Shown: positions 19,792-48,515 of the stretch, one piece after another
Layout of the letters: every line of letters starts with the position of its first letter
Position numbering within the stretch: position 1 is the first letter of the stretch
IMG/VR virus record: IMGVR_UViG_3300032116_000001
Span: 1 to 64,000 of that record
DNA length: 64,000 nt
Strand: one strand, 5' to 3'
Made by a program: the position numbers and the translations under genes
The notes under the pieces: model-generated
The model's database searches: none
The model's input: only the letters and a program-made list of their open reading frames with translations
What the model was told of the DNA's origin: nothing

Positions 19792-20193
19792 ATGGCTGAT
19801 TATTACACCCATTTTTCCTTTGTCGTTGACGTTAAGAATCGTGAACAAGCAGACGGTTTGAAGAAAATGCTCACCCAGGCCAAAAATGAAGAGCTAAATG
19901 AAGAAACTTTGTACACTCCTTGGAGTTGTGAAACTAAGGACGATTTAACTAGCTTTTGGTTTCACTCTGATGATTGTGGTCAGGTTGATCTTATTGTTGA
20001 CATTTTGGCTAAATGGCAAGAAGACTTCAATTACGATCAGCCCATTTGTTTTGAGTGGGCGAATACTTGTAGTAAGCCCAAACTGGATGCTTTTGGTGGT
20101 GGGTCAGTTCTGATTTACAAGGGCGAAGCTCATTACACGAACACTTTTGATTGGTTGACTAAAAAGAAAGCCGAACTTGGAATCGTTGACTGA
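19792..20193 (+). CDS. hypothetical phage protein
   Basis: Promoter motif; MADYYTHFS...FEWANTCSKPKLDAFGGG. Confidence 0.75.
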   Translation: MADYYTHFSFVVDVKNREQADGLKKMLTQAKNEELNEETLYTPWSCETKDDLTSFWFHSDDCGQVDLIVDILAKWQEDFNYDQPICFEWANTCSKPKLDAFGGGSVLIYKGEAHYTNTFDWLTKKKAELGIVD

Positions 20194-20397: not shown

Positions 20398-20698
20398 CGG
20401 GGCGTGGCGAAATGGCAGACGCAGGGGACTTATAAAATGAGCACTTGTTTGTGAAAGCTGCAAGTGAATGCAATCAAATTCGGTGAAACCTTAACAGTTA
20501 GGCTGATGGCAATACCGAGCCAAGCTAACTCAAAACAGAGTTAGAAGGTGTAGAGACTAGATGGTTGCTGCCTAAGTCGAAAGATATGGCAAAGGTATAG
20601 TCCAGACCACAAAATCCTTTGGGATCGTAGTGAAAGCTATAGTGGTATGAAAATCCCTTAGTAGCAATACTGTGTGGGTTCGAGTCCCACCGCCCCGA
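20398..20698 (+). tRNA. tRNA-Leu (TAA) interrupted by a group I intron
   Basis: Exons 20398-20431 and 20650-20698; joining them restores GGGGA-CTT^AAAA-TCCCT. Confidence 0.92.
20432..20649 (+). mobile_element. group I intron (tRNA-Leu UAA type, IC3-like), 218 nt, no ORF
   Basis: Inserted after the U of the anticodon, ends in G; P AAATTCGGTGAAA, Q AATACCGAGC, R GTAGAGACTAGATGG, S AAGGTATAGTCC. Confidence 0.9.
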
Positions 20699-20748
20699 TT
20701 AGGTTATATATTGATTACTAATGCGCTTTGTGTGCTTTTAGTATAAGA

Positions 20749-21246
20749 ATGTTTGTGTCACGTTTGCAAAAATATACCCTAGAGGAGATAAAAGAAATAA
20801 TATCTAAATCAAAATCTTATGCTGAAGTAATTCGATCTATTGGTTTAATTCCTGCTGGTGGAAATTACAAAACATTGCAAAGTTTTGTACATGAATACCG
20901 AATTGATACTTCGCATTTTCTGGGCTCAGCTTGGGGGCGAGGAAACCAATTGGATTATCTCCACAATAGCAATAGAAAATCATTAGAAGATGTTTTTTCG
21001 GGAAAAGTAGCTTATAAATCAAGCCATAAATTAAGGCTTCGGCTGATTAAAGAAGGATATTTTGAGCATAAATGCTATAAATGTGGACTAAAAGAGTGGC
21101 AAGGACACGAAATACCCTTGGAATTAGAGCATATAAATGGAGATCATTGTGATAACAGTCTCGAAAACCTCATTATTCTTTGCCCCAACTGTCATGCTCA
21201 AACAGAAACTTATGCTGGTAAAAACAAAAAAAGACGATTAGGTTAA
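20749..21246 (+). CDS. HNH homing endonuclease
   Basis: CYKCG...LELEHINGDHCDNSLENLIILCPNCH. Confidence 0.9.
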   Translation: MFVSRLQKYTLEEIKEIISKSKSYAEVIRSIGLIPAGGNYKTLQSFVHEYRIDTSHFLGSAWGRGNQLDYLHNSNRKSLEDVFSGKVAYKSSHKLRLRLIKEGYFEHKCYKCGLKEWQGHEIPLELEHINGDHCDNSLENLIILCPNCHAQTETYAGKNKKRRLG

Positions 21247-23378: not shown

Positions 23379-23505
23379 ACTCCAAAAACATTCTCATTGA
23401 GGGAGAATTTAATCCCTCAATGAGAAAAAACAAAAAACTGCTAACAAAAAGCAGGTGATCGTCGTATAATAAGAGAAGAAACTGAAAAGCACAAAGAGCT
23501 ATATT

Positions 23506-23628
23506 ATGAATCATCTCTTATCGACGACAATATGTGGAACAACAGGAACCTCAACAAGAGGAATCCTTTCCCTTGGCGTTATCGGCAAGGATAGTGATTC
23601 TGATTCAGGAGAACCCATCGAATCGTAG
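23506..23628 (+). CDS. Gly/Ser/Thr-rich leader peptide (40 aa)
   Basis: MNHLLSTTICGTTGTSTRGILSLGVIGKDSDSDSGEPIES; run of GGA/ACA/TCA codons; upstream of a terminator and tRNA-Gly/Ser/Thr. Confidence 0.8.
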   Translation: MNHLLSTTICGTTGTSTRGILSLGVIGKDSDSDSGEPIES

Positions 23629-23689
23629 CTTTACTGTGATTACAGAACAAAGAGGCTCGATTCGATAAGATCGAGCCTCTTTTCTTTTT
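23617..23689 (+). promoter_or_regulatory. transcription attenuator (antiterminator overlapping the leader stop, plus terminator)
   Basis: 2:3 ATCGAATCG(T)AGCTTT/GAGGCTCGATTCGAT; 3:4 AAAGAGGCTCGAT/ATCGAGCCTCTTT followed by TCTTTTT. Confidence 0.8.
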
Positions 23690-23818
23690 AGATATGATGT
23701 CTGGGAAGAGAAAGATCGAATATTGAAAATTTCATACAGGTATAGATATAAAAGTGTTAGGGGGTGTTGGATCGATCTTTGATCGCAGGCCTCACCCCCT
23801 TGATCGAGACACATTTTC

Positions 23819-24030: not shown

Positions 24031-24128
24031 TTTTGTAACAAAATCATAAAATTCAAAGCAGGTGTAGCTCAGTGGTAGAGCGCCCGCCGCGAAGGTTGAT
24101 GGTTGCAATATCGATAAATAGATTATGT

Positions 24129-24545
24129 ATGGCAATAACAAAATACAAAGGAGCCGTCGGGCTAACTAATGTAATGGCCTGTCTTGTCAATCAAAAAGCA
24201 AAAATCTTTGTTCCAATAGACGAAGACTGTCAATATGACCTGGTGGTAGATTATCAAAATTATCTTTACAGAGTGCAAGTTAAATATGCTGAGGCAAAAA
24301 ATGGCAAGATCGTTGTAAAGACGCGCTCAACGAATAACTATTGTGAAATTCGTTATACTAAAGATCATTTTGACGTGATTGCTGTTTGGGACAATGTTGG
24401 CAAAAAAGCATATTTTATTTCATCGAATTTAATCACAGAAGGAATGACGGAAATGACCTTGAGATTAGATGCACCAAAAAACAATCAAACTAAAAACATA
24501 AGATTGGCTCGTAATTATGAGCAATTTAATGCTGCGGTCGCATAG
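24129..24545 (+). CDS. PD-(D/E)XK homing endonuclease (I-Ssp6803I/PDDEXK_5-like)
   Basis: YDLVVD...RVQVK...YTKDHFD...LRLDAPKNNQ. Confidence 0.85.
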   Translation: MAITKYKGAVGLTNVMACLVNQKAKIFVPIDEDCQYDLVVDYQNYLYRVQVKYAEAKNGKIVVKTRSTNNYCEIRYTKDHFDVIAVWDNVGKKAYFISSNLITEGMTEMTLRLDAPKNNQTKNIRLARNYEQFNAAVA

Positions 24546-24613
24546 TGGTCGATTGCACCTCTCTTGTAAAGAGGAACTCCACACCGTGGGTTCGAATCCC
24601 ACCCGTAGCTCCA
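24531..24613 (+). tRNA. tRNA-Thr (TGT)
   Basis: GCTGCGG/CCGTAGC-TCCA; CCTCT-CTTGTAA-AGAGG; overlaps the endonuclease stop. Confidence 0.9.
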
Positions 24614-24725
24614 TTTTTCGCACATATGTGTCAGGGGTTCGAATCCCCTCTCCTGCTTTGAGTTGAGTGATGATATCCGATCATAAAAAATCCCCCTTTT
24701 TCTCAATAGTGATCGGATATATAAA

Positions 24726-25325
24726 GTATTGCTGTGAGCTAAATCAATTGACACAGCATGATGAAACCAAAATCATCTAAAAACAATAAGGTGCTCCATA
24801 TACGTCTGGGAAAGATAAATTAGACGTGGACACACTGTGATGTGGACTAATCACAGCGCACTGGGGCATGTGTGCAAGCCCGAAAAGCCTATCTTTACTG
24901 ATATAGTTAAAGAGAAAGAGCAGAGAGTTAAGGCTTAAAATAAACTCCATGCGTTCGTAAGGATGAACTCAAAGACGAGTTCAGTTATGACTAGGATACG
25001 AGAGGAGGGAGGCAATGAGTTTCTCTCCTCTCCCCGACAAAGCGATTTCCGACTGCTCATCGGAGAAGTGATCTAGTAAAACACTCAGAAAAACACTAGC
25101 GTAGGAAATGCGTTAATCCCTGATTTTTTATCGGTTTTTAGAGACAAAAAACTGTTCGTATAGGGCTTGCGGTAAGCCTCTTGTTTTAGCTAGGTGATCC
25201 TGTATGTAAAAACCAAGCGGATGGAACAAATCAATTTGTTTTCGCGAGCAAATGATCCATTGACTTTGGGGAACAGCGTAAGAACGTTTCGCCATGAGGC
25301 TTTGAGCAAAGTCTCGTTCCCCAAA
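24726..25325 (+). ncRNA. large structured ncRNA (~600 nt), ROOL/GOLLD-like
   Basis: No + strand ORF of 60 aa or more, own promoter, many helices, located between tRNAs. Confidence 0.65.
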
Positions 25326-25339
25326 AATAAAAAGATTCT

Positions 25340-25416
25340 GGGTATGTAGTTCAGTTGGTTAGAGCACCTGCCTGTCACGCAGGAAGTCGCGAGTTCAAGT
25401 CTCGTCATATCCGCCA
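25340..25416 (+). tRNA. tRNA-Asp (GTC)
   Basis: Canonical cloverleaf, CCA. Confidence 0.97.
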
Positions 25417-25436
25417 AAATTTCCAAAGGAGACAAA

Positions 25437-25652
25437 ATGAATAGACAAATAGAAAGCCTCGATCATCTGGTGTCTCTTGGGCTACTGACATCATATGAGT
25501 TTGTAAACGTGTCAGCCAATAACATTGAGGGCGAGATTTCAGAACATCATAATTCTGATCGATTGAAACTCATATTCCCGAATGGGTTGGAAGTGAAGAT
25601 CACTGCGATCACAACAGGCATGGAAGAAGATGCTCTTTTGAGATTGGAATAA
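25437..25652 (+). CDS. hypothetical protein
   Basis: AAGGAG SD. Confidence 0.65.
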   Translation: MNRQIESLDHLVSLGLLTSYEFVNVSANNIEGEISEHHNSDRLKLIFPNGLEVKITAITTGMEEDALLRLE

Positions 25653-26291: not shown

Positions 26292-26488
26292 TAATTGATT
26301 TTCCAACGAAGCACCTTGGCAAGAGCTTTTTCTAACAGTTTTGGCTCCATGCCAAGAAGGACACGTGCCCTGAAACCACGTGTTAATGCTGAAAATATGG
26401 GGACAATCGGGAGAGACCGATAAAAAATCCCTCTTTTTTGGGGAATGAAATTCATATAAGAAATGTGAAGTGAAAGAAAAGTAAAAAG

Positions 26489-26634
26489 TTCGCCCGAATT
26501 AAATATCGGAACAATCCTTTCCTGAAGAGGTTTAGCACTAATTAGGATTAAAGACACTTGGAGTGGGAACTCTGTTTGAAAGAAGTAACATATACCCCGC
26601 AATGGTAACAGACCTACCACCGAGGCGAAAAATT
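26489..26634 (+). ncRNA. putative structured ncRNA, copy A (related to 50739..50906)
   Basis: Identical 22-nt and 19-nt end blocks shared with 50739..50906; the ends pair (TTCGCC/GGCGAA). Confidence 0.55.
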
Positions 26635-26801
26635 GCTAGATAAATGGAAATCTAGCTCAACGAGCACAGACACCTTGTAGCTAAAAGCGTCGCATGTGAG
26701 AGCCATTGCGGAAGTGGTGTGACAATCGGGAGAGACCGATAAAAAATCCCCTTTTTTCGAGGGATAAAACAATATAAAAGATATCAGTGCAGTGCGGAGT
26801 G

Positions 26802-31953: not shown

Positions 31954-32163
31954 ATGAACGATTCAAATCGCTTTGAAGTAATCAGCTCAGGTCCATACAA
32001 TTTGAAGATTGTTGCGCAAACTATGACTGAGTGCATGGATATGATTCGACGAAACTCTGACATGGTGGACTTCTGGGCAGTTTTAGACCATTCTACGAAA
32101 ACCGTGGTCGCTTTAAGCCAGGACTGGAAAGTCTTGCCAACATTCAAACCCGCAGTAAACTAA
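31954..32163 (+). CDS. hypothetical protein
   Basis: Promoter motif upstream. Confidence 0.6.
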   Translation: MNDSNRFEVISSGPYNLKIVAQTMTECMDMIRRNSDMVDFWAVLDHSTKTVVALSQDWKVLPTFKPAVN

Positions 32164-33443
32164 TGAAAGAATCTCGATATATTTTCGCTGACGTGAGCGC
32201 GAATAATAACAAGTTTTGGAACATCAAAATTGAACCAAACTTCACGGTCGTAACTTCGTGGGGCCGAGTCGGAGATAACGCACAATCAAAGGAATTTCCC
32301 CACGGAAGCCTTGCAGACGCAGAAAAGTTCTTCGATAGGAAATGCCGCGAAAAGGAACGAAAAGGATACGTTAAGCAAAGAGTTCTGATCGGAGAATACA
32401 CCACGCAAGATAACACTTCGCTTGCGTCAGTTGCCAAACAACAAATCAACACAAATAGCCCCGAATTAGATGAACTAATTGCCTTCCTGACTAAAGCAAA
32501 CGTTCATAACATTCTAACAGCAACAGCTATGGAATACGACACTTCAAAGGGAGTTTTTACAACGCCCCTCGGAGTTGTCACGAACGATGCCATTCAAGAT
32601 GCACGAAGCATCTTGGCATCAATGGGCCTTCTTGTGCATAATCAAGATTGGAACTCCCCCGATTGGAATTCGCTCTTGTCTATGTACCTTACTGCCATCC
32701 CTCAAAAGATTGGACGCAGAAAGCCAGACCCAAGAGAACTCTTCCCGAGCCTTCAAGCTATTCAAAATCAAAGCAAAATTCTTGACGACCTGGAAGCATC
32801 ATTCCAATCTGTCGTGAGCGCACCACTGACGCAGAAAGGGGATGACACAAACACGCCACAAGTGTTTGATGTGAAATTGCATCTTGTAGACGATCAAAGC
32901 ATAATTCGACGAATCAAAAACAAATACGACTCCACACGAAAGACCATGCACGCATCATATCATCTGGGGGTGAAACGAGTCTTTTCTGTCGAAATTAACG
33001 CGATGGCAAAGGCATATGGTGATCGGGGAAAGAACGTCGGCAACGTGATGGAACTCTGGCATGGGACACGAGCGGGGAACCTTTTGAGCATCCTTAAAGG
33101 CGGACTGCAAGTCCCACCCGCATCGAGCCCTCATGTGACGGGGAGAATGTTCGGGGATGGATTGTATTTTTCAGATCAGTCCACGAAAAGCCTCAATTAT
33201 GCCTATGGAGCAGCACCAGGACAAAGAGGAGGAATTGAATCGTCCACGTTCATGTTTCTCGCAGATGTAGCAATGGGACGCCCATTTGTCCCAACGTCCT
33301 ATACACGACCGTCAAAGTACCCCGTGCAAGGACATGATTCAATATTTGCAAAAGCAGGACAATCAGGCGTACACAATAATGAAATGATCGTATACACCAC
33401 CGATCAATGCAACCTCACCTACCTGGTTGAATTCGGAAACTAA
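32163..33443 (+). CDS. WGR-domain poly(ADP-ribose) polymerase (PARP)
   Basis: WGRVG; helical regulatory domain; LWHGT, GRMFGDGLYF, KSLNY, NEMIVY (H-Y-E triad). Confidence 0.92.
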   Translation: MKESRYIFADVSANNNKFWNIKIEPNFTVVTSWGRVGDNAQSKEFPHGSLADAEKFFDRKCREKERKGYVKQRVLIGEYTTQDNTSLASVAKQQINTNSPELDELIAFLTKANVHNILTATAMEYDTSKGVFTTPLGVVTNDAIQDARSILASMGLLVHNQDWNSPDWNSLLSMYLTAIPQKIGRRKPDPRELFPSLQAIQNQSKILDDLEASFQSVVSAPLTQKGDDTNTPQVFDVKLHLVDDQSIIRRIKNKYDSTRKTMHASYHLGVKRVFSVEINAMAKAYGDRGKNVGNVMELWHGTRAGNLLSILKGGLQVPPASSPHVTGRMFGDGLYFSDQSTKSLNYAYGAAPGQRGGIESSTFMFLADVAMGRPFVPTSYTRPSKYPVQGHDSIFAKAGQSGVHNNEMIVYTTDQCNLTYLVEFGN

Positions 33444-43482: not shown

Positions 43483-43850
43483 GTGACTGGGAACAAGAAA
43501 GGGGGAAGTAACTCCCTCTTTCTTTATGACTTTCCGTGATTATGCGCCACGATCATTAAAAATCCCCTATATCTTATATTCCAATCGGATATATAAGATA
43601 TAATGAAAACCAAACATGTTTTTCGAGTTTACCCCAAGAATGCAACATCTTCCGAGGATGCTTTGGTAATTGAGAAAACCATAAGCCCGAAATCTGTCCT
43701 TCGAGTAATGGGAAACCTTCTTGGCAAGTATAATGCTTCAGAAGTGGCTTTATTGAAATCCGAGGACAAATAAGACTTTTTTAACAAAAAGTCCCAAAAT
43801 CATAGGACGATTTTGTTTTTTGATCGTATAATAGATAAGGACACTTTATT

Positions 43851-43943
43851 ATGAAGACCCACACCACATCAAATACGAATATGGTCTTCACCCGACGCAA
43901 TTCCGCGACGGGCGTCCAACAACGCTGTCGGCGTTCCGCTTAA
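43851..43943 (+). CDS. Gln/Arg/Cys leader peptide MKTHTTSNTNMVFTRRNSATGVQQRCRRSA
   Basis: AAGGAC SD; CAA CAA CGC TGT CGG CGT codon run; upstream of tRNA-Gln x2, tRNA-Arg x2 and tRNA-Cys. Confidence 0.75.
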   Translation: MKTHTTSNTNMVFTRRNSATGVQQRCRRSA

Positions 43944-44032
43944 GTCGGGCTGACACGTTACCACCTGCAAGTAACTTCTTTTTCGAAGAATTAGCCCGCT
44001 CTCTGAGCGAGACGTCGATTATCATCTCGTGC

Positions 44033-44106
44033 TCGGGGATCGTCTAGAGGCAGGACTCTGGTCTCTGGAACCAGAAGCGGTGGTTCGAATCCATCTCTCC
44101 GAGCCA
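44033..44106 (+). tRNA. tRNA-Gln (CTG)
   Basis: TCGGGGA/TCTCCGA-GCCA; CTGGT-CTCTGGA-ACCAG. Confidence 0.93.
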
Positions 44107-48300: not shown

Positions 48301-48394
48301 TGCGACACTATATCATTTTTATGACTTTCTACGATTGTGTGGCACGATCATAAAAAATCCCCCTAATAAAGCTGAGTAATCGGATATATAATGT

Positions 48395-48474
48395 GGGGCA
48401 AATAGCTCAGTAAAGACATATGGGAATGTAACAGTAGAGGTTTCCGCGTATGTTCAAATCCTGTTGCTCCACCA
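48395..48474 (+). ncRNA. tRNA-Ala-like mini RNA lacking an anticodon arm
   Basis: GGGGCAA/TTGCTCC-ACCA with G3:U70; own promoter. Confidence 0.55.
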
Positions 48475-48515
48475 AAAATCCCCTATATTTTCCGCGTTCA
48501 TGCCATATATAAACT

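What the first reader, a model, noticed from the sequence alone, without database searches (positions are those of the whole stretch)
24726..25325. ~600-nt ornate non-coding RNA between tRNA genes (ROOL/GOLLD-like or a new class)
This stretch has no sense-strand ORF of 60 aa or more in a very gene-dense genome and starts right after a standard promoter. It contains many helices: TGCTGTG/CACAGCA, ACGTCT/AGACGT, CTGTGAT/ATCACAG, TGAACTC/GAGTTCA, GAGAGGAG/CTCCTCTC, GAGGCTTTG/CAAAGTCTC and terminal TTTGGGGAAC/GTTCCCCAAA. Size and tRNA-cluster context fit the ROOL and GOLLD RNAs of phages; the family assignment is from memory only.
Basis: partly seen in the sequence, partly recalled or inferred. 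Interest (0 to 1): 0.7.

Follow-up and report, generated by a model that had tools for sequence, protein, structure and literature searches.

The report
Abundant orphan noncoding RNA, phage tRNA island
A freshwater jumbo phage makes a discrete, highly abundant noncoding RNA of about 550-610 nt from one of its own promoters just upstream of a tRNA gene; it is not ROOL or GOLLD (the phage has a GOLLD elsewhere), no relative was found, and so whether it is a new structured-RNA class stays open.

Summary
Window 24728-25339 has no plausible ORF, even if one stop codon is recoded.

A phage-specific promoter lies directly upstream. This promoter class has 39 copies in the genome, and 24 of them put a start codon at exactly +16. 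At this copy the +16 position reads ATT.

In seven of eight metatranscriptome runs, contigs cover only about 24738-25288, at depth 4-142. Flanking genes are at 0-7, and ORF71 downstream is at 0. It is therefore a real, discrete, abundant RNA.

It is not ROOL or GOLLD: no Rfam family matches at E≤10. The same 379-kb phage does encode a GOLLD RNA, 310 kb away (127.9 bits, E 3e-36).

No homologue was found anywhere. All same-phage contigs fetched are identical, so covariation cannot be tested. Related phages have a different noncoding RNA, conserved among themselves, in the same promoter-to-tRNA-Asp slot.

Best reading: a stable noncoding RNA co-transcribed with tRNA-Asp and released by RNase P. 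That is the same kind as T4 RNAC/RNAD, GOLLD and ROOL, but it is an orphan. Its function and any ornate fold are unproven.

The parts
24686..24724 (+). Phage-specific promoter: upstream element AAAAATCCCCC (24686-24696) and ATCGGATATATAA (24712-24724)
   Evidence: The motif occurs 33 times in the window against 1.45 expected. There are 39 copies genome-wide, all in the first 64 kb, and 24 have a start codon at exactly +16 with an ORF of 40 aa or more, which suggests leaderless mRNAs. That it works as a promoter is inferred, not shown.
24728..25339 (+). Maximal extent of the noncoding RNA ('W'), from the predicted start to the base before tRNA-Asp
   Evidence: Position +16 of this promoter reads ATT (24728-24730) where 24 other copies have a start codon. 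There is no ORF. The 3' limit is the 5' end of tRNA-Asp; RNase P cleavage there is inferred.
24738..25288 (+). Core covered by metatranscriptome contigs
   Evidence: Contigs and depths: X16 24645-25288 (53), X17 24738-25278 (34), X19 24738-25217 (61); X18 24742-25247 (10), X20 24743-25219 (85), X25 24742-24995 and 25059-25282, X28 24861-25213 (142). All have zero mismatches. Flanking genes are at depth 0-7. Contigs carry no strand; the + strand is inferred from the promoter and from the 5' ends clustering at 24738-24743.
24731..24757 (+). Hairpin 1 (GCUGUG/CACAGC)
   Evidence: Mean pairing probability 0.99.
24803..24826 (+). Hairpin 3 (CGUCUGG/UUAGACG), extended by GUG.UCC/GGA.CAC to 24791-24833 in the MFE
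   Evidence: P 0.96.
24835..24856 (+). Hairpin 4 (CUGUGAU/AUCACAG)
   Evidence: P 0.92.
24863..24881 (+). 5' strand of a predicted long-range helix that closes a central domain of about 300 nt
   Evidence: 24873-24881 pairs with 25163-25171 (9 bp, P 0.98) and 24863-24867 with 25176-25180 (P 0.87). This is a prediction only. By my own estimate (not computed with a tool) an 8-9 bp match somewhere in 613 nt is not rare by chance.
24964..24983 (+). Hairpin 5 (UGAACUC/GAGUUCA)
   Evidence: P 0.97.
25000..25032 (+). Hairpin 6, the most stable (14 bp, GAGAGGAGGGAGGC/GUUUCUCUCCUCUC). It sequesters a Shine-Dalgarno-like run and an AUG that opens an 18-codon ORF.
   Evidence: P 1.00; sequence read.
25097..25115 (+). 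Hairpin 8 (UAGCGUA/UGCGUUA)
   Evidence: P 0.88.
25163..25180 (+). 3' strand of the long-range helix. Alternatively a local terminator-like hairpin followed by CUUGUUUUAG.
   Evidence: Contigs run 25-100 nt past it, so it is not the main 3' end.
25221..25260 (+). Hairpin 9 (AUGGA/UCCAU with an inner UUUGUUU/GAGCAAA)
   Evidence: P 0.86-0.93. Three contig 3' ends (25213-25219) fall just before it.
25266..25324 (+). Terminal hairpin (UUGGGGAAC/GUUCCCCAA with an inner GAGGCUUU/AAAGUCUC), followed by the A-rich AAAAAUAAAAAG
   Evidence: P 0.95-0.98. The contigs stop at or before 25288, so whether this hairpin is in the abundant species is open.
25340..25416 (+). tRNA-Asp(gtc), in the same transcription unit
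   Evidence: ARAGORN; Rfam 67.1 bits. No copy of this promoter motif lies between 24712 and 25677.
25437..25652 (+). ORF71, a conserved hypothetical protein with its own Shine-Dalgarno sequence; last gene of the unit
   Evidence: Homologues at 65-70% identity in related phages. RNA-seq depth is 0 in all 8 runs.
24630..24657 (+). Remnant of a tRNA 3' half (T arm plus 3' acceptor strand) between tRNA-Thr and the promoter
   Evidence: Sequence read. Relatives carry an unusual but complete tRNA at this position (Rfam 49.5 bits in L016/L017).

Best explanation
The stretch encodes a discrete noncoding RNA of about 550-610 nt. It is the first product of a phage transcription unit: phage-specific promoter, then the RNA, then tRNA-Asp, then ORF71.

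Transcription is inferred to start at about 24728. That is the position where 24 other copies of the same promoter place the AUG of a leaderless mRNA; here it reads AUU.

RNase P cleavage at the 5' end of tRNA-Asp (25339/25340) would free the RNA's 3' end. Trimming back to the 3' hairpins would then give the heterogeneous 3' ends seen at about 25213-25288. Both steps are inferred.

The RNA accumulates 10-40 fold above the neighbouring mRNAs (shown). This is presumably because its stable hairpins, and possibly a long-range helix closing a central domain of about 300 nt, protect it (predicted).

It belongs to the known kind 'abundant phage noncoding RNAs of tRNA regions' (T4 RNAC/RNAD, GOLLD, ROOL, phage K lncRNAs). 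It is not a member of any described family. Its trans-acting function, if any, is unknown. My guess is a stable RNA that binds or sequesters a host or phage factor, rather than a regulator of the downstream tRNA.
For: Expression:
- Seven of eight metatranscriptome runs from different studies give zero-mismatch contigs over 24738-25288 only, at depth 4-142. Flanking genes are at 0-7 and ORF71 at 0.
- With a 2.5-kb query, RNA runs hold only about 0.2 of the sampled words. With the RNA alone they hold 0.26-0.94, across 14 runs.
- Five contig 5' ends cluster at 24738-24743, 10-15 nt after the predicted start.

Promoter:
- A consensus-quality copy lies at 24686-24724. The class has 39 copies, 24 with a start codon at +16.

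Noncoding:
-. tblastn of six-frame pieces found no protein remnant.

Structure:
- More hairpins than chance and MFE z of -3.2 to -4.4.

Slot conservation:
- Three related phage lineages share the order tRNA, promoter, noncoding stretch, tRNA-Asp, ORF71.
- Their noncoding RNA has a 55-60-nt core that is 70-85% identical, while ORF71 third-codon positions are only 43-54% identical.
- 11 predicted pairs in it show changes on both sides.
- So the slot carries a selected RNA in the relatives.

Precedent:
- T4 RNAC and RNAD come from the tRNA region and have unknown roles (PMC3014915, PMC9697503).
- GOLLD and ROOL are abundant and lie near tRNA islands (10.1101/2024.12.08.627333).
- Phage K has abundant lncRNAs next to tRNA genes (PMC9241854).
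Against: - No homologue of this RNA exists in any collection searched, so conservation and covariation are untested.
- All same-phage contigs fetched, from several samples, are 100% identical over 3-6 kb, so there is no signal of selection either way.
- The RNA in the relatives' slot is not detectably homologous to it.
- Local folding z-scores are not exceptional for this genome, and only 34% of bases pair with high probability.
- The promoter is needed for tRNA-Asp and ORF71 anyway, so its quality says nothing about the RNA itself.
- The RNA-seq data are assembled contigs: no strand, no exact ends, flat depths. One run (X15) showed no laid contig over the RNA although it holds 87% of its words.
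- RNase P release is inferred.
Confidence: 0.6

Rival explanations
1. It is an inert but stable leader or spacer of the tRNA-Asp precursor, possibly the decayed remains of a former leaderless early gene. It is transcribed because the promoter serves tRNA-Asp and ORF71, and it accumulates only because its hairpins slow decay.
For: - It occupies the place where other units of this promoter class have a leaderless ORF, and ATT is one change away from ATG.
- The slot's content is not conserved between this phage and its relatives.
- Local folding is moderate.
- No homologues were found.
Against: - Stops are dense in all frames and no protein remnant is detectable.
- Accumulation is 10-40 fold over neighbouring mRNAs in many independent samples.
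- 612 nt of junk would be unusual in a genome 95% covered by ORFs of 60 aa or more.
- The relatives' slot RNA is under purifying selection.
Confidence: 0.27
2. It is a cis-acting regulatory leader (attenuator) that controls read-through into tRNA-Asp and ORF71. It would do so through the alternative pairing of 25163-25171, either with 24873-24881 or within the local terminator-like hairpin.
For: - A terminator-like hairpin at 25163-25179 is followed by CUUGUUUUAG.
- Its 5' arm can instead pair with 24873-24881.
- ORF71 depth is 0 while the leader is abundant.
Against: - All contigs run 25-100 nt beyond the U-rich tract.
- No known riboswitch or leader family matches.
- From general knowledge, a leader of about 450 nt ahead of the switch is far longer than known attenuators.
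- An mRNA segment downstream of a tRNA is expected to be unstable after processing anyway.
Confidence: 0.07
3. It is a divergent member of the ROOL or GOLLD family.
For: Its size, tRNA-island position, abundance and lake origin match what is described for these RNAs (10.1101/2024.12.08.627333).
Against: - There is no match to RF03087 or RF02032 at E<=10 in the region.
- ROOL is absent from the whole genome.
- The genome's GOLLD match is at 334582-335043 and is unrelated in sequence to this RNA.
Confidence: 0.02
4. It is an mRNA for one or more micro-proteins, for example the 18-codon ORF that starts at the AUG inside hairpin 6 behind a GGAGG run.
For: A Shine-Dalgarno-like GAGGAGGGAGG lies just upstream of that AUG. 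Small ORFs of 21-51 aa exist.
Against: - The Shine-Dalgarno run and the AUG are buried in the most stable helix (P 1.00).
- The other small ORFs have no ribosome-binding site.
- Nothing comparable is present in the relatives.
- Micro-ORFs this short are expected by chance.
Confidence: 0.04

Closest known systems
GOLLD RNA (Rfam RF02032)
   Same: It is a large phage-encoded RNA of unknown function, found in or next to tRNA genes and first seen in lake metagenomes (10.1101/2024.12.08.627333). This very phage encodes one.
   Different: There is no covariance-model match in the region and no sequence similarity to the phage's own GOLLD locus. The RNA here is shorter, its predicted fold is less densely paired, and no conserved 3' domain is present.
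ROOL RNA (Rfam RF03087)
   Same: It has a similar length (model of 574 positions), is encoded by phages and prophages near tRNA islands, and can be extremely abundant (10.1101/2024.12.08.627333).
   Different: There is no match at E<=10 in the region or anywhere in the genome. ROOL's pseudoknotted consensus could not be compared further because this RNA has no homologues.
Phage T4 RNAC and RNAD
   Same: They are stable RNAs of unknown role transcribed from the phage tRNA region (PMC3014915, PMC9697503). This is the nearest match to the co-transcription-and-processing logic proposed here.
   Different: From memory, the T4 RNAs are only about 120-140 nt. blastn against the phage GenBank collection matched only the tRNA-Asp part of the query.
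Kayvirus (phage K) lncRNAs
   Same: They are abundant long noncoding transcripts next to tRNA genes, and their authors compared them with GOLLD and ROOL (PMC9241854).
   Different: The phage and host are unrelated, and blastn found no similarity.
Noncoding RNA in the same slot of related phages
   Same: It has the same position: phage promoter, noncoding RNA, tRNA-Asp, ORF71. It also has no conserved ORF (ATG-TAA, ATG-TGA or 34 codons).
   Different: It is not alignable to this RNA. Smith-Waterman scores fall within the null, the profile finds nothing, and the core alignment gives p of about 0.7. Its lengths are about 215, 300 and 500 nt.

Membership tests
ROOL (RF03087) | Match to the family covariance model (gathering score 99.1 bits) | tested here: not met
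   There is no hit at E<=10 in 24500-25500 and none in the whole 378,848-bp genome. The control genomes do not contain ROOL, so that search's sensitivity was not demonstrated.
ROOL (RF03087) | Conserved multi-pseudoknot secondary structure supported by covariation | not testable with these tools
   No homologue of this RNA was found, so no alignment exists.
ROOL / GOLLD (shared, non-defining traits) | Phage-encoded, beside tRNA genes, highly abundant transcript | tested here: met
   It lies between tRNA-Thr and tRNA-Asp in a 379-kb virus record, and RNA contigs reach depth 4-142 against flanks at 0-7.
GOLLD (RF02032) | Match to the family covariance model, including the conserved 3' domain (gathering score 150 bits) | tested here: not met
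   The region has no hit at E<=10. In the same genome the model does detect 334582-335043 at 127.9 bits (E 3e-36), so the search was sensitive.
GOLLD (RF02032) | Sequence relation to a bona fide GOLLD locus | tested here: not met
   Smith-Waterman scores against genome 333868-335310, on both strands, fall within the shuffle null.
Any other Rfam 15 family (OLE, HEARO, raiA, tmRNA, RNase P, 6S, group I/II introns, riboswitches) | Covariance-model match | tested here: not met
   Only chance-level hits (E 6.7-9.3) to unrelated eukaryotic snoRNA and miRNA models touch the RNA. Nothing reaches a gathering score.
Stable RNAs of phage tRNA operons (T4 RNAC/RNAD type; a functional grouping, not a sequence family) | Transcribed together with tRNA genes and accumulating as a discrete stable species | tested here: inconclusive
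   Discrete accumulation is shown. Co-transcription with tRNA-Asp is inferred, because no promoter motif lies between 24712 and 25677. No read-level data span the junction.
   nhmmer with the three-sequence profile finds nothing in the region. The best local alignments of the core give p of 0.65-0.76.

The most novel reading that the evidence does not exclude
The RNA is the first known member of a new class of large, structured, trans-acting phage RNA. It would coexist with a GOLLD RNA in one jumbo phage and accumulate to high levels during infection in lakes. The 'promoter to tRNA-Asp' slot of this phage group would then be a hot spot where different functional RNAs are swapped in.
Probability: 0.3. 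Interest if true: 0.65.

Novelty: new variant of a known kind. Interest (0 to 1): 0.5.

Why it matters
Large phage RNAs beside tRNA genes (GOLLD, ROOL) are among the most striking RNAs of unknown function, and both were recently shown to form RNA-only nanocages.

This case gives a jumbo phage that carries a GOLLD and also a second, unrelated RNA of about 0.6 kb. That second RNA is the dominant phage signal from this 5-kb neighbourhood in seven of the eight lake metatranscriptomes laid.

If it is functional, phages carry more kinds of large RNA than the two or three known classes, and tRNA islands are where to look. The related phages suggest the same slot can hold different RNAs.

If it is only a stable leader, it is a useful warning: abundance and hairpins alone do not make an 'ornate' RNA.

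Tried and rejected
Searches for homologues that found nothing useful:
- blastn against phage GenBank hit only tRNA-Asp.
- BLAST against three distant kin found through the PARP-like gene gave only chance hits.
- Relatives found through ORF71 have a non-homologous RNA in the slot.
- Nine same-phage contigs, and a strain variant reached through the 112-aa neighbour, are 100% identical.
- One 1,879-nt variant contig that should contain the RNA could not be fetched.
- Two 16-mer seeds in IMG/VR gave only seed-level chance matches.
- The promoter motif is absent from other IMG/VR contigs. The relatives' promoter pattern gave single chance hits.
- The relatives' core motif is absent from IMG/VR and gives only chance hits in 185,579 reference genomes.
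- No paralogue exists in the phage's own genome.

Readings considered and rejected:
- A recoded or decayed gene.
- A duplicated GOLLD 5' domain.
- A DNA-level element such as an origin or packaging site. There are no iterons or direct repeats and no skew inflection, and the RNA is abundant.
- A second promoter, noncoding stretch, tRNA unit at 43584-44033. It contains a 56-aa ORF and is not comparable.
- Antisense targeting. The only 14-nt complementarity, 25122-25135 against 26416-26429 and 26735-26748, falls in a repeated promoter-upstream element and has E of 0.7.

Errors and limits:
- My remembered accession for GOLLD (RF01998) was wrong and was corrected to RF02032.
- The records behind the relatives' loci are not held.

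Full report
WHAT THE WINDOW IS. The window is the first 64 kb of a 378,848-bp IMG/VR virus record rated 100% complete, that is, a jumbo phage. Near-identical DNA is present in many freshwater metagenomes from 2017-2024. The genome is 40.6% G+C, and 95% of it is covered by ORFs of 60 aa or more. The window holds 15 tRNA genes and a group I intron.

CHECK OF THE OBSERVATION. The stretch lies between tRNA-Thr(tgt) at 24531-24613 and tRNA-Asp(gtc) at 25340-25416.

The longest sense-strand ORFs are 51, 37 and 33 aa. Every sense frame holds 11-23 stop codons, of all three kinds. Recoding any one stop lengthens only minus-strand frames, to 84-118 codons. tblastn with all six-frame pieces matched only the repeated promoter motif.

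The stretch is among the three longest in the genome that are free of an ORF of 60 aa or more on either strand. The other two are 43483-44028 and the group I intron region.

Perfect 7-mers with a reverse complement within 60 nt number 10, against 2.2±1.8 in 500 shuffles. The MFE z-score is -3.2 to -4.4 with 100 dinucleotide shuffles, and is similar on both strands.

The thermodynamic signal should not be over-read.
- In 150-nt windows the values across the RNA are -1.5, -1.3, -3.4, -2.9, -0.3 and +0.1.
- The background from 18-32 kb has mean -0.58 and sd 1.3, with 14% of windows below -2.
- Only 34% of bases pair with p of 0.7 or more.

So the helices are real and exceed chance, but 'ornate' is not shown.

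THE PROMOTER. Directly upstream, at 24686-24724, lies AAAAATCCCCC..N..ATCGGATATATAA. It is not a sigma-70 consensus. It is one copy of a motif found 33 times in the window against 1.45 expected.

Aligned, the copies share about 40 nt. Genome-wide there are 39 copies with the upstream element, all within the first 64 kb. In 24 of them a start codon sits exactly 16 nt after the A of ATCGG and opens an ORF of 40 aa or more. This fixed spacing suggests that transcription starts at or next to that codon, giving leaderless mRNAs. That is an inference.

At the copy in front of the finding the +16 position reads ATT (24728-24730). No ORF of 40 aa or more starts within 200 nt, which is true of only three of the 39 copies. 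No further copy of this motif occurs before 25677. The unit is therefore promoter, RNA, tRNA-Asp, ORF71 (25437-25652, with its own Shine-Dalgarno sequence).

TRANSCRIPTION. Public RNA runs were found with the sequence. With a 2.5-kb query the metatranscriptomes held only 0.17-0.26 of the sampled words. With the 614-nt RNA alone, 14 RNA runs held 0.26-0.94.

Logan contigs from eight RNA runs of different studies were laid on 3.6-5.5 kb around the site.

| Run | Contig over the RNA | Depth |
|---|---|---|
| X16 | 24645-25288 | 53 |
| X17 | 24738-25278 | 34 |
| X19 | 24738-25217 | 61 |
| X18 | 24742-25247 | 10 |
| X20 | 24743-25219 | 85 |
| X25 | 24742-24995 and 25059-25282 | 4-6 |
| X28 | 24861-25213 | 142 |

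- All of these contigs have zero mismatches.
- In X18 this contig was the only phage piece laid.
- Flanking coding DNA is at depth 0-7 in the same runs, and ORF71 is at 0 in all eight.
- The pattern rules out DNA carry-over and shows a discrete, abundant RNA.
- Five independent 5' ends fall at 24738-24743, 10-15 nt after the predicted start. That is what assembled ends of a transcript starting at about 24728 would look like.
- The 3' ends are heterogeneous: 25213-25219 in three runs, 25247 in one, and 25278-25288 in three.

Limits of this evidence:
- Contigs carry no strand. The + strand is inferred from the promoter and from the 5' ends.
- Depths are flat per contig.
- X15 showed no contig over the RNA although it holds 87% of its words; the tool warns that a filter can hide records.

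KNOWN FAMILIES. No Rfam 15 family reaches its gathering score in the window other than tRNAs and one group I intron. With permissive filters and E<=10 on 24500-25500, nothing credible touches the RNA.

The ROOL model (RF03087) finds nothing in the entire genome at E<=10.

The GOLLD model (RF02032) does find a full-length match, model positions 1-416, at genome 334582-335043. It scores 127.9 bits with E 3e-36, below the curated 150 bits. A tRNA is embedded in the linker, as described for some GOLLD RNAs (10.1101/2024.12.08.627333).

So this phage does own a GOLLD RNA, 310 kb from the finding. The RNA studied here has no similarity to that locus on either strand. Membership in ROOL or GOLLD is therefore tested and not met. 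What remains is a resemblance in kind: large, phage-encoded, beside tRNAs and abundant.

SEARCH FOR HOMOLOGUES. None was found.
- blastn against 50,697 phage records matched only the tRNA-Asp part.
- Three distant kin found through the PARP-like protein gave only chance hits.
- The downstream ORF71 has homologues at 65-70% identity. Their contigs define three related lineages: A = L013-L015, B = L016-L017, C = L018-L019.
- These lineages share the gene order: tRNA-Gly/Thr, an unusual tRNA, a phage promoter (AAAACTTTCCCCC..CCCTATAG), a noncoding stretch, tRNA-Asp, ORF71.
- Their noncoding stretch is about 500 nt in A and about 215 nt in B. In C it is about 300 nt followed by a 101-aa ORF.
- It is conserved among the three, with Smith-Waterman scores of 78-126 against a null of 31-41.
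- It is not alignable to the RNA of this window. Pairwise scores fall within the null, an nhmmer profile finds nothing, and the conserved core aligns with p of 0.65-0.76. An apparent match that MAFFT suggested is therefore chance.
- Nine contigs of the same phage from other samples, and a strain variant reached through the 112-aa neighbour, are 100% identical across the RNA or the part of it they contain. One variant contig that should contain the RNA could not be fetched.
- Exact-word scans of IMG/VR with two 16-mers gave only seed-level chance matches. The phage's promoter motif is absent from other IMG/VR contigs.

WHAT THE RELATIVES ADD. Between lineages A, B and C, the third-codon positions of ORF71 are only 43-54% identical. 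A 55-60-nt core of their slot RNA (ATCCCTWAGCTGGAGGGT..AAAATCGAGCRGC) is 70-85% identical. RNAalifold finds 11 pairs with changes on both sides (only three sequences).

The leaderless-position ATG is followed at once by TAA in A and by TGA in C, and by 34 codons in B. So that RNA is noncoding too.

The slot therefore carries a selected noncoding RNA in the relatives. This phage is more distant from them: its tRNA-Asp is only about 70% identical to theirs, while theirs are 97-100% identical to each other. It carries a different, longer RNA in the same place. Whether that reflects replacement or divergence beyond recognition cannot be decided.

HOW IT MOST LIKELY WORKS.

Shown:
- A discrete noncoding RNA covering at least 24738-25288.
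- It accumulates far above its neighbours in natural infections.

Inferred:
- It starts at about 24728 from the phage promoter and is made as one transcript with tRNA-Asp and ORF71.
- RNase P cutting at 25339/25340 releases it.
- Exonucleolytic trimming stops at the 3' hairpins (25221-25260 and 25266-25324). This would explain the two clusters of 3' ends.
- Its stability comes from its hairpins, notably the 14-bp helix at 25000-25032, and perhaps from a long-range helix (24873-24881 with 25163-25171) that closes a domain of about 300 nt.

Function is unknown. I put about 0.6 on a functional, stable, probably trans-acting RNA of the tRNA-region kind. Precedents are T4 RNAC and RNAD (PMC3014915, PMC9697503), GOLLD and ROOL, and the phage K lncRNAs (PMC9241854).

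I put about 0.27 on an inert stable leader or decayed gene, about 0.07 on a cis-acting attenuator, and a few percent each on a micro-protein mRNA or a divergent ROOL/GOLLD.

NOVELTY AND SCORE. This is not a member of any described family, but it is of a known kind. It is an orphan, and its strongest support is expression rather than conservation. I rate it a new variant of a known kind, with interest 0.5. The score is lifted by the unusually clear environmental RNA-seq signal and by coexistence with a GOLLD RNA. It is held down by the lack of any homologue and by only moderate evidence for an elaborate fold.

Noticed in passing
outside the window: genome G000 334582-335043 (+), locus L040 1501-1962: A full-length GOLLD RNA match (RF02032, model positions 1-416, 127.9 bits, E 3e-36, below the curated 150 bits) with a tRNA embedded in its linker (L040 1571-1641). 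It lies in the longest stretch of the genome free of ORFs of 80 aa or more (333868-335310).
   Followed up: partly
window, 39 sites, e.g. 1958, 13645, 24712, 25677, 57825(-): A phage-specific promoter class, AAAAATCCCC..N..ATCGGATATATAA, is confined to the first 64 kb of the 379-kb genome. In 24 of 39 copies a start codon sits exactly at +16, which suggests leaderless mRNAs. Several copies begin right after the 3' end of a tRNA gene.
   Followed up: partly
window 26402-26470 and 26721-26790; RNA contigs 26470-26794: Two copies, 319 nt apart, of a variant promoter-like repeat (GACAATCGGGAGAGACCGATAAAAAATCCC..) lie in an ORF-poor stretch. The first is followed by ATG-TGA. The stretch shows low but consistent coverage (depth 2-6) in seven of the eight RNA runs laid, so it may be another small noncoding transcription unit.
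   Followed up: no
window 57812-57630 (-) and 53222-52990 (-): Two further copies of the promoter have no ORF of 40 aa or more within 200 nt. The first unit (about 190 nt) ends in a clear hairpin plus U-run (57668-57630), which makes it a candidate small RNA.
   Followed up: no
window 48394-48476 (+): Directly after a promoter copy lies a tRNA-like sequence with a 7-bp acceptor stem and an encoded CCA end. Neither ARAGORN nor Rfam calls it a tRNA, even at E<=1. It is followed at once by another promoter-like element.
   Followed up: partly
window 24072-24545 (+) and 24531-24613: A PD-(D/E)XK endonuclease ORF (Pfam PDDEXK_5, E 6.6e-23), possibly a homing endonuclease, overlaps the first 15 nt of tRNA-Thr(tgt). 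This tRNA is 83 nt long with a long variable region, whereas the relatives' copy is 75-76 nt.
   Followed up: no
window 32163-33443 (+): A phage protein with the full eukaryote-like PARP architecture: WGR, PARP regulatory and PARP catalytic domains (E 1.9e-27 for the catalytic domain). Homologues at 38-47% identity occur in three other large IMG/VR phage contigs.
   Followed up: no
L013 4399-4900, L016 4689-4904, L018 600 to about 900: Related phages carry a small family of noncoding RNAs upstream of tRNA-Asp. It has a strongly conserved core (ATCCCTWAGCTGGAGGGT..AAAATCGAGCRGC), a start-stop (ATG-TAA or ATG-TGA) at the leaderless position in two of three lineages, and no Rfam match. No members were found in IMG/VR or in reference genomes.
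   Followed up: partly
L016 4574-4646, L017 281-353, and the aligned stretches of L013 and L018: An unusual tRNA (anticodon loop reads GTC, encoded CCA, atypical D region) is missed by ARAGORN but scores 49.5 bits with Rfam tRNA. In the window only a 3'-half remnant is left at the same position (24630-24657).
   Followed up: no
window 23487-23763: Low but reproducible RNA coverage in six of the eight runs laid falls around a strong 14-bp terminator hairpin (23649-23682). It is probably a stable 3' end fragment of the upstream operon.
   Followed up: no
runs X2-X6; protein P0008: Five runs labelled 'fungus metagenome' hold 100% of the 2.5-kb stretch, which may point to a culture or co-culture that contains the host. 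The window's 112-aa neighbour protein also occurs on a 420,993-bp contig, longer than this 378,848-bp record.
   Followed up: no
window 20421-20624 (+): A group I intron (RF00028, 58.2 bits) lies in an ORF-free gap of 534 nt between ORFs 19792-20193 and 20728-21246. The interrupted gene was not identified.
   Followed up: no
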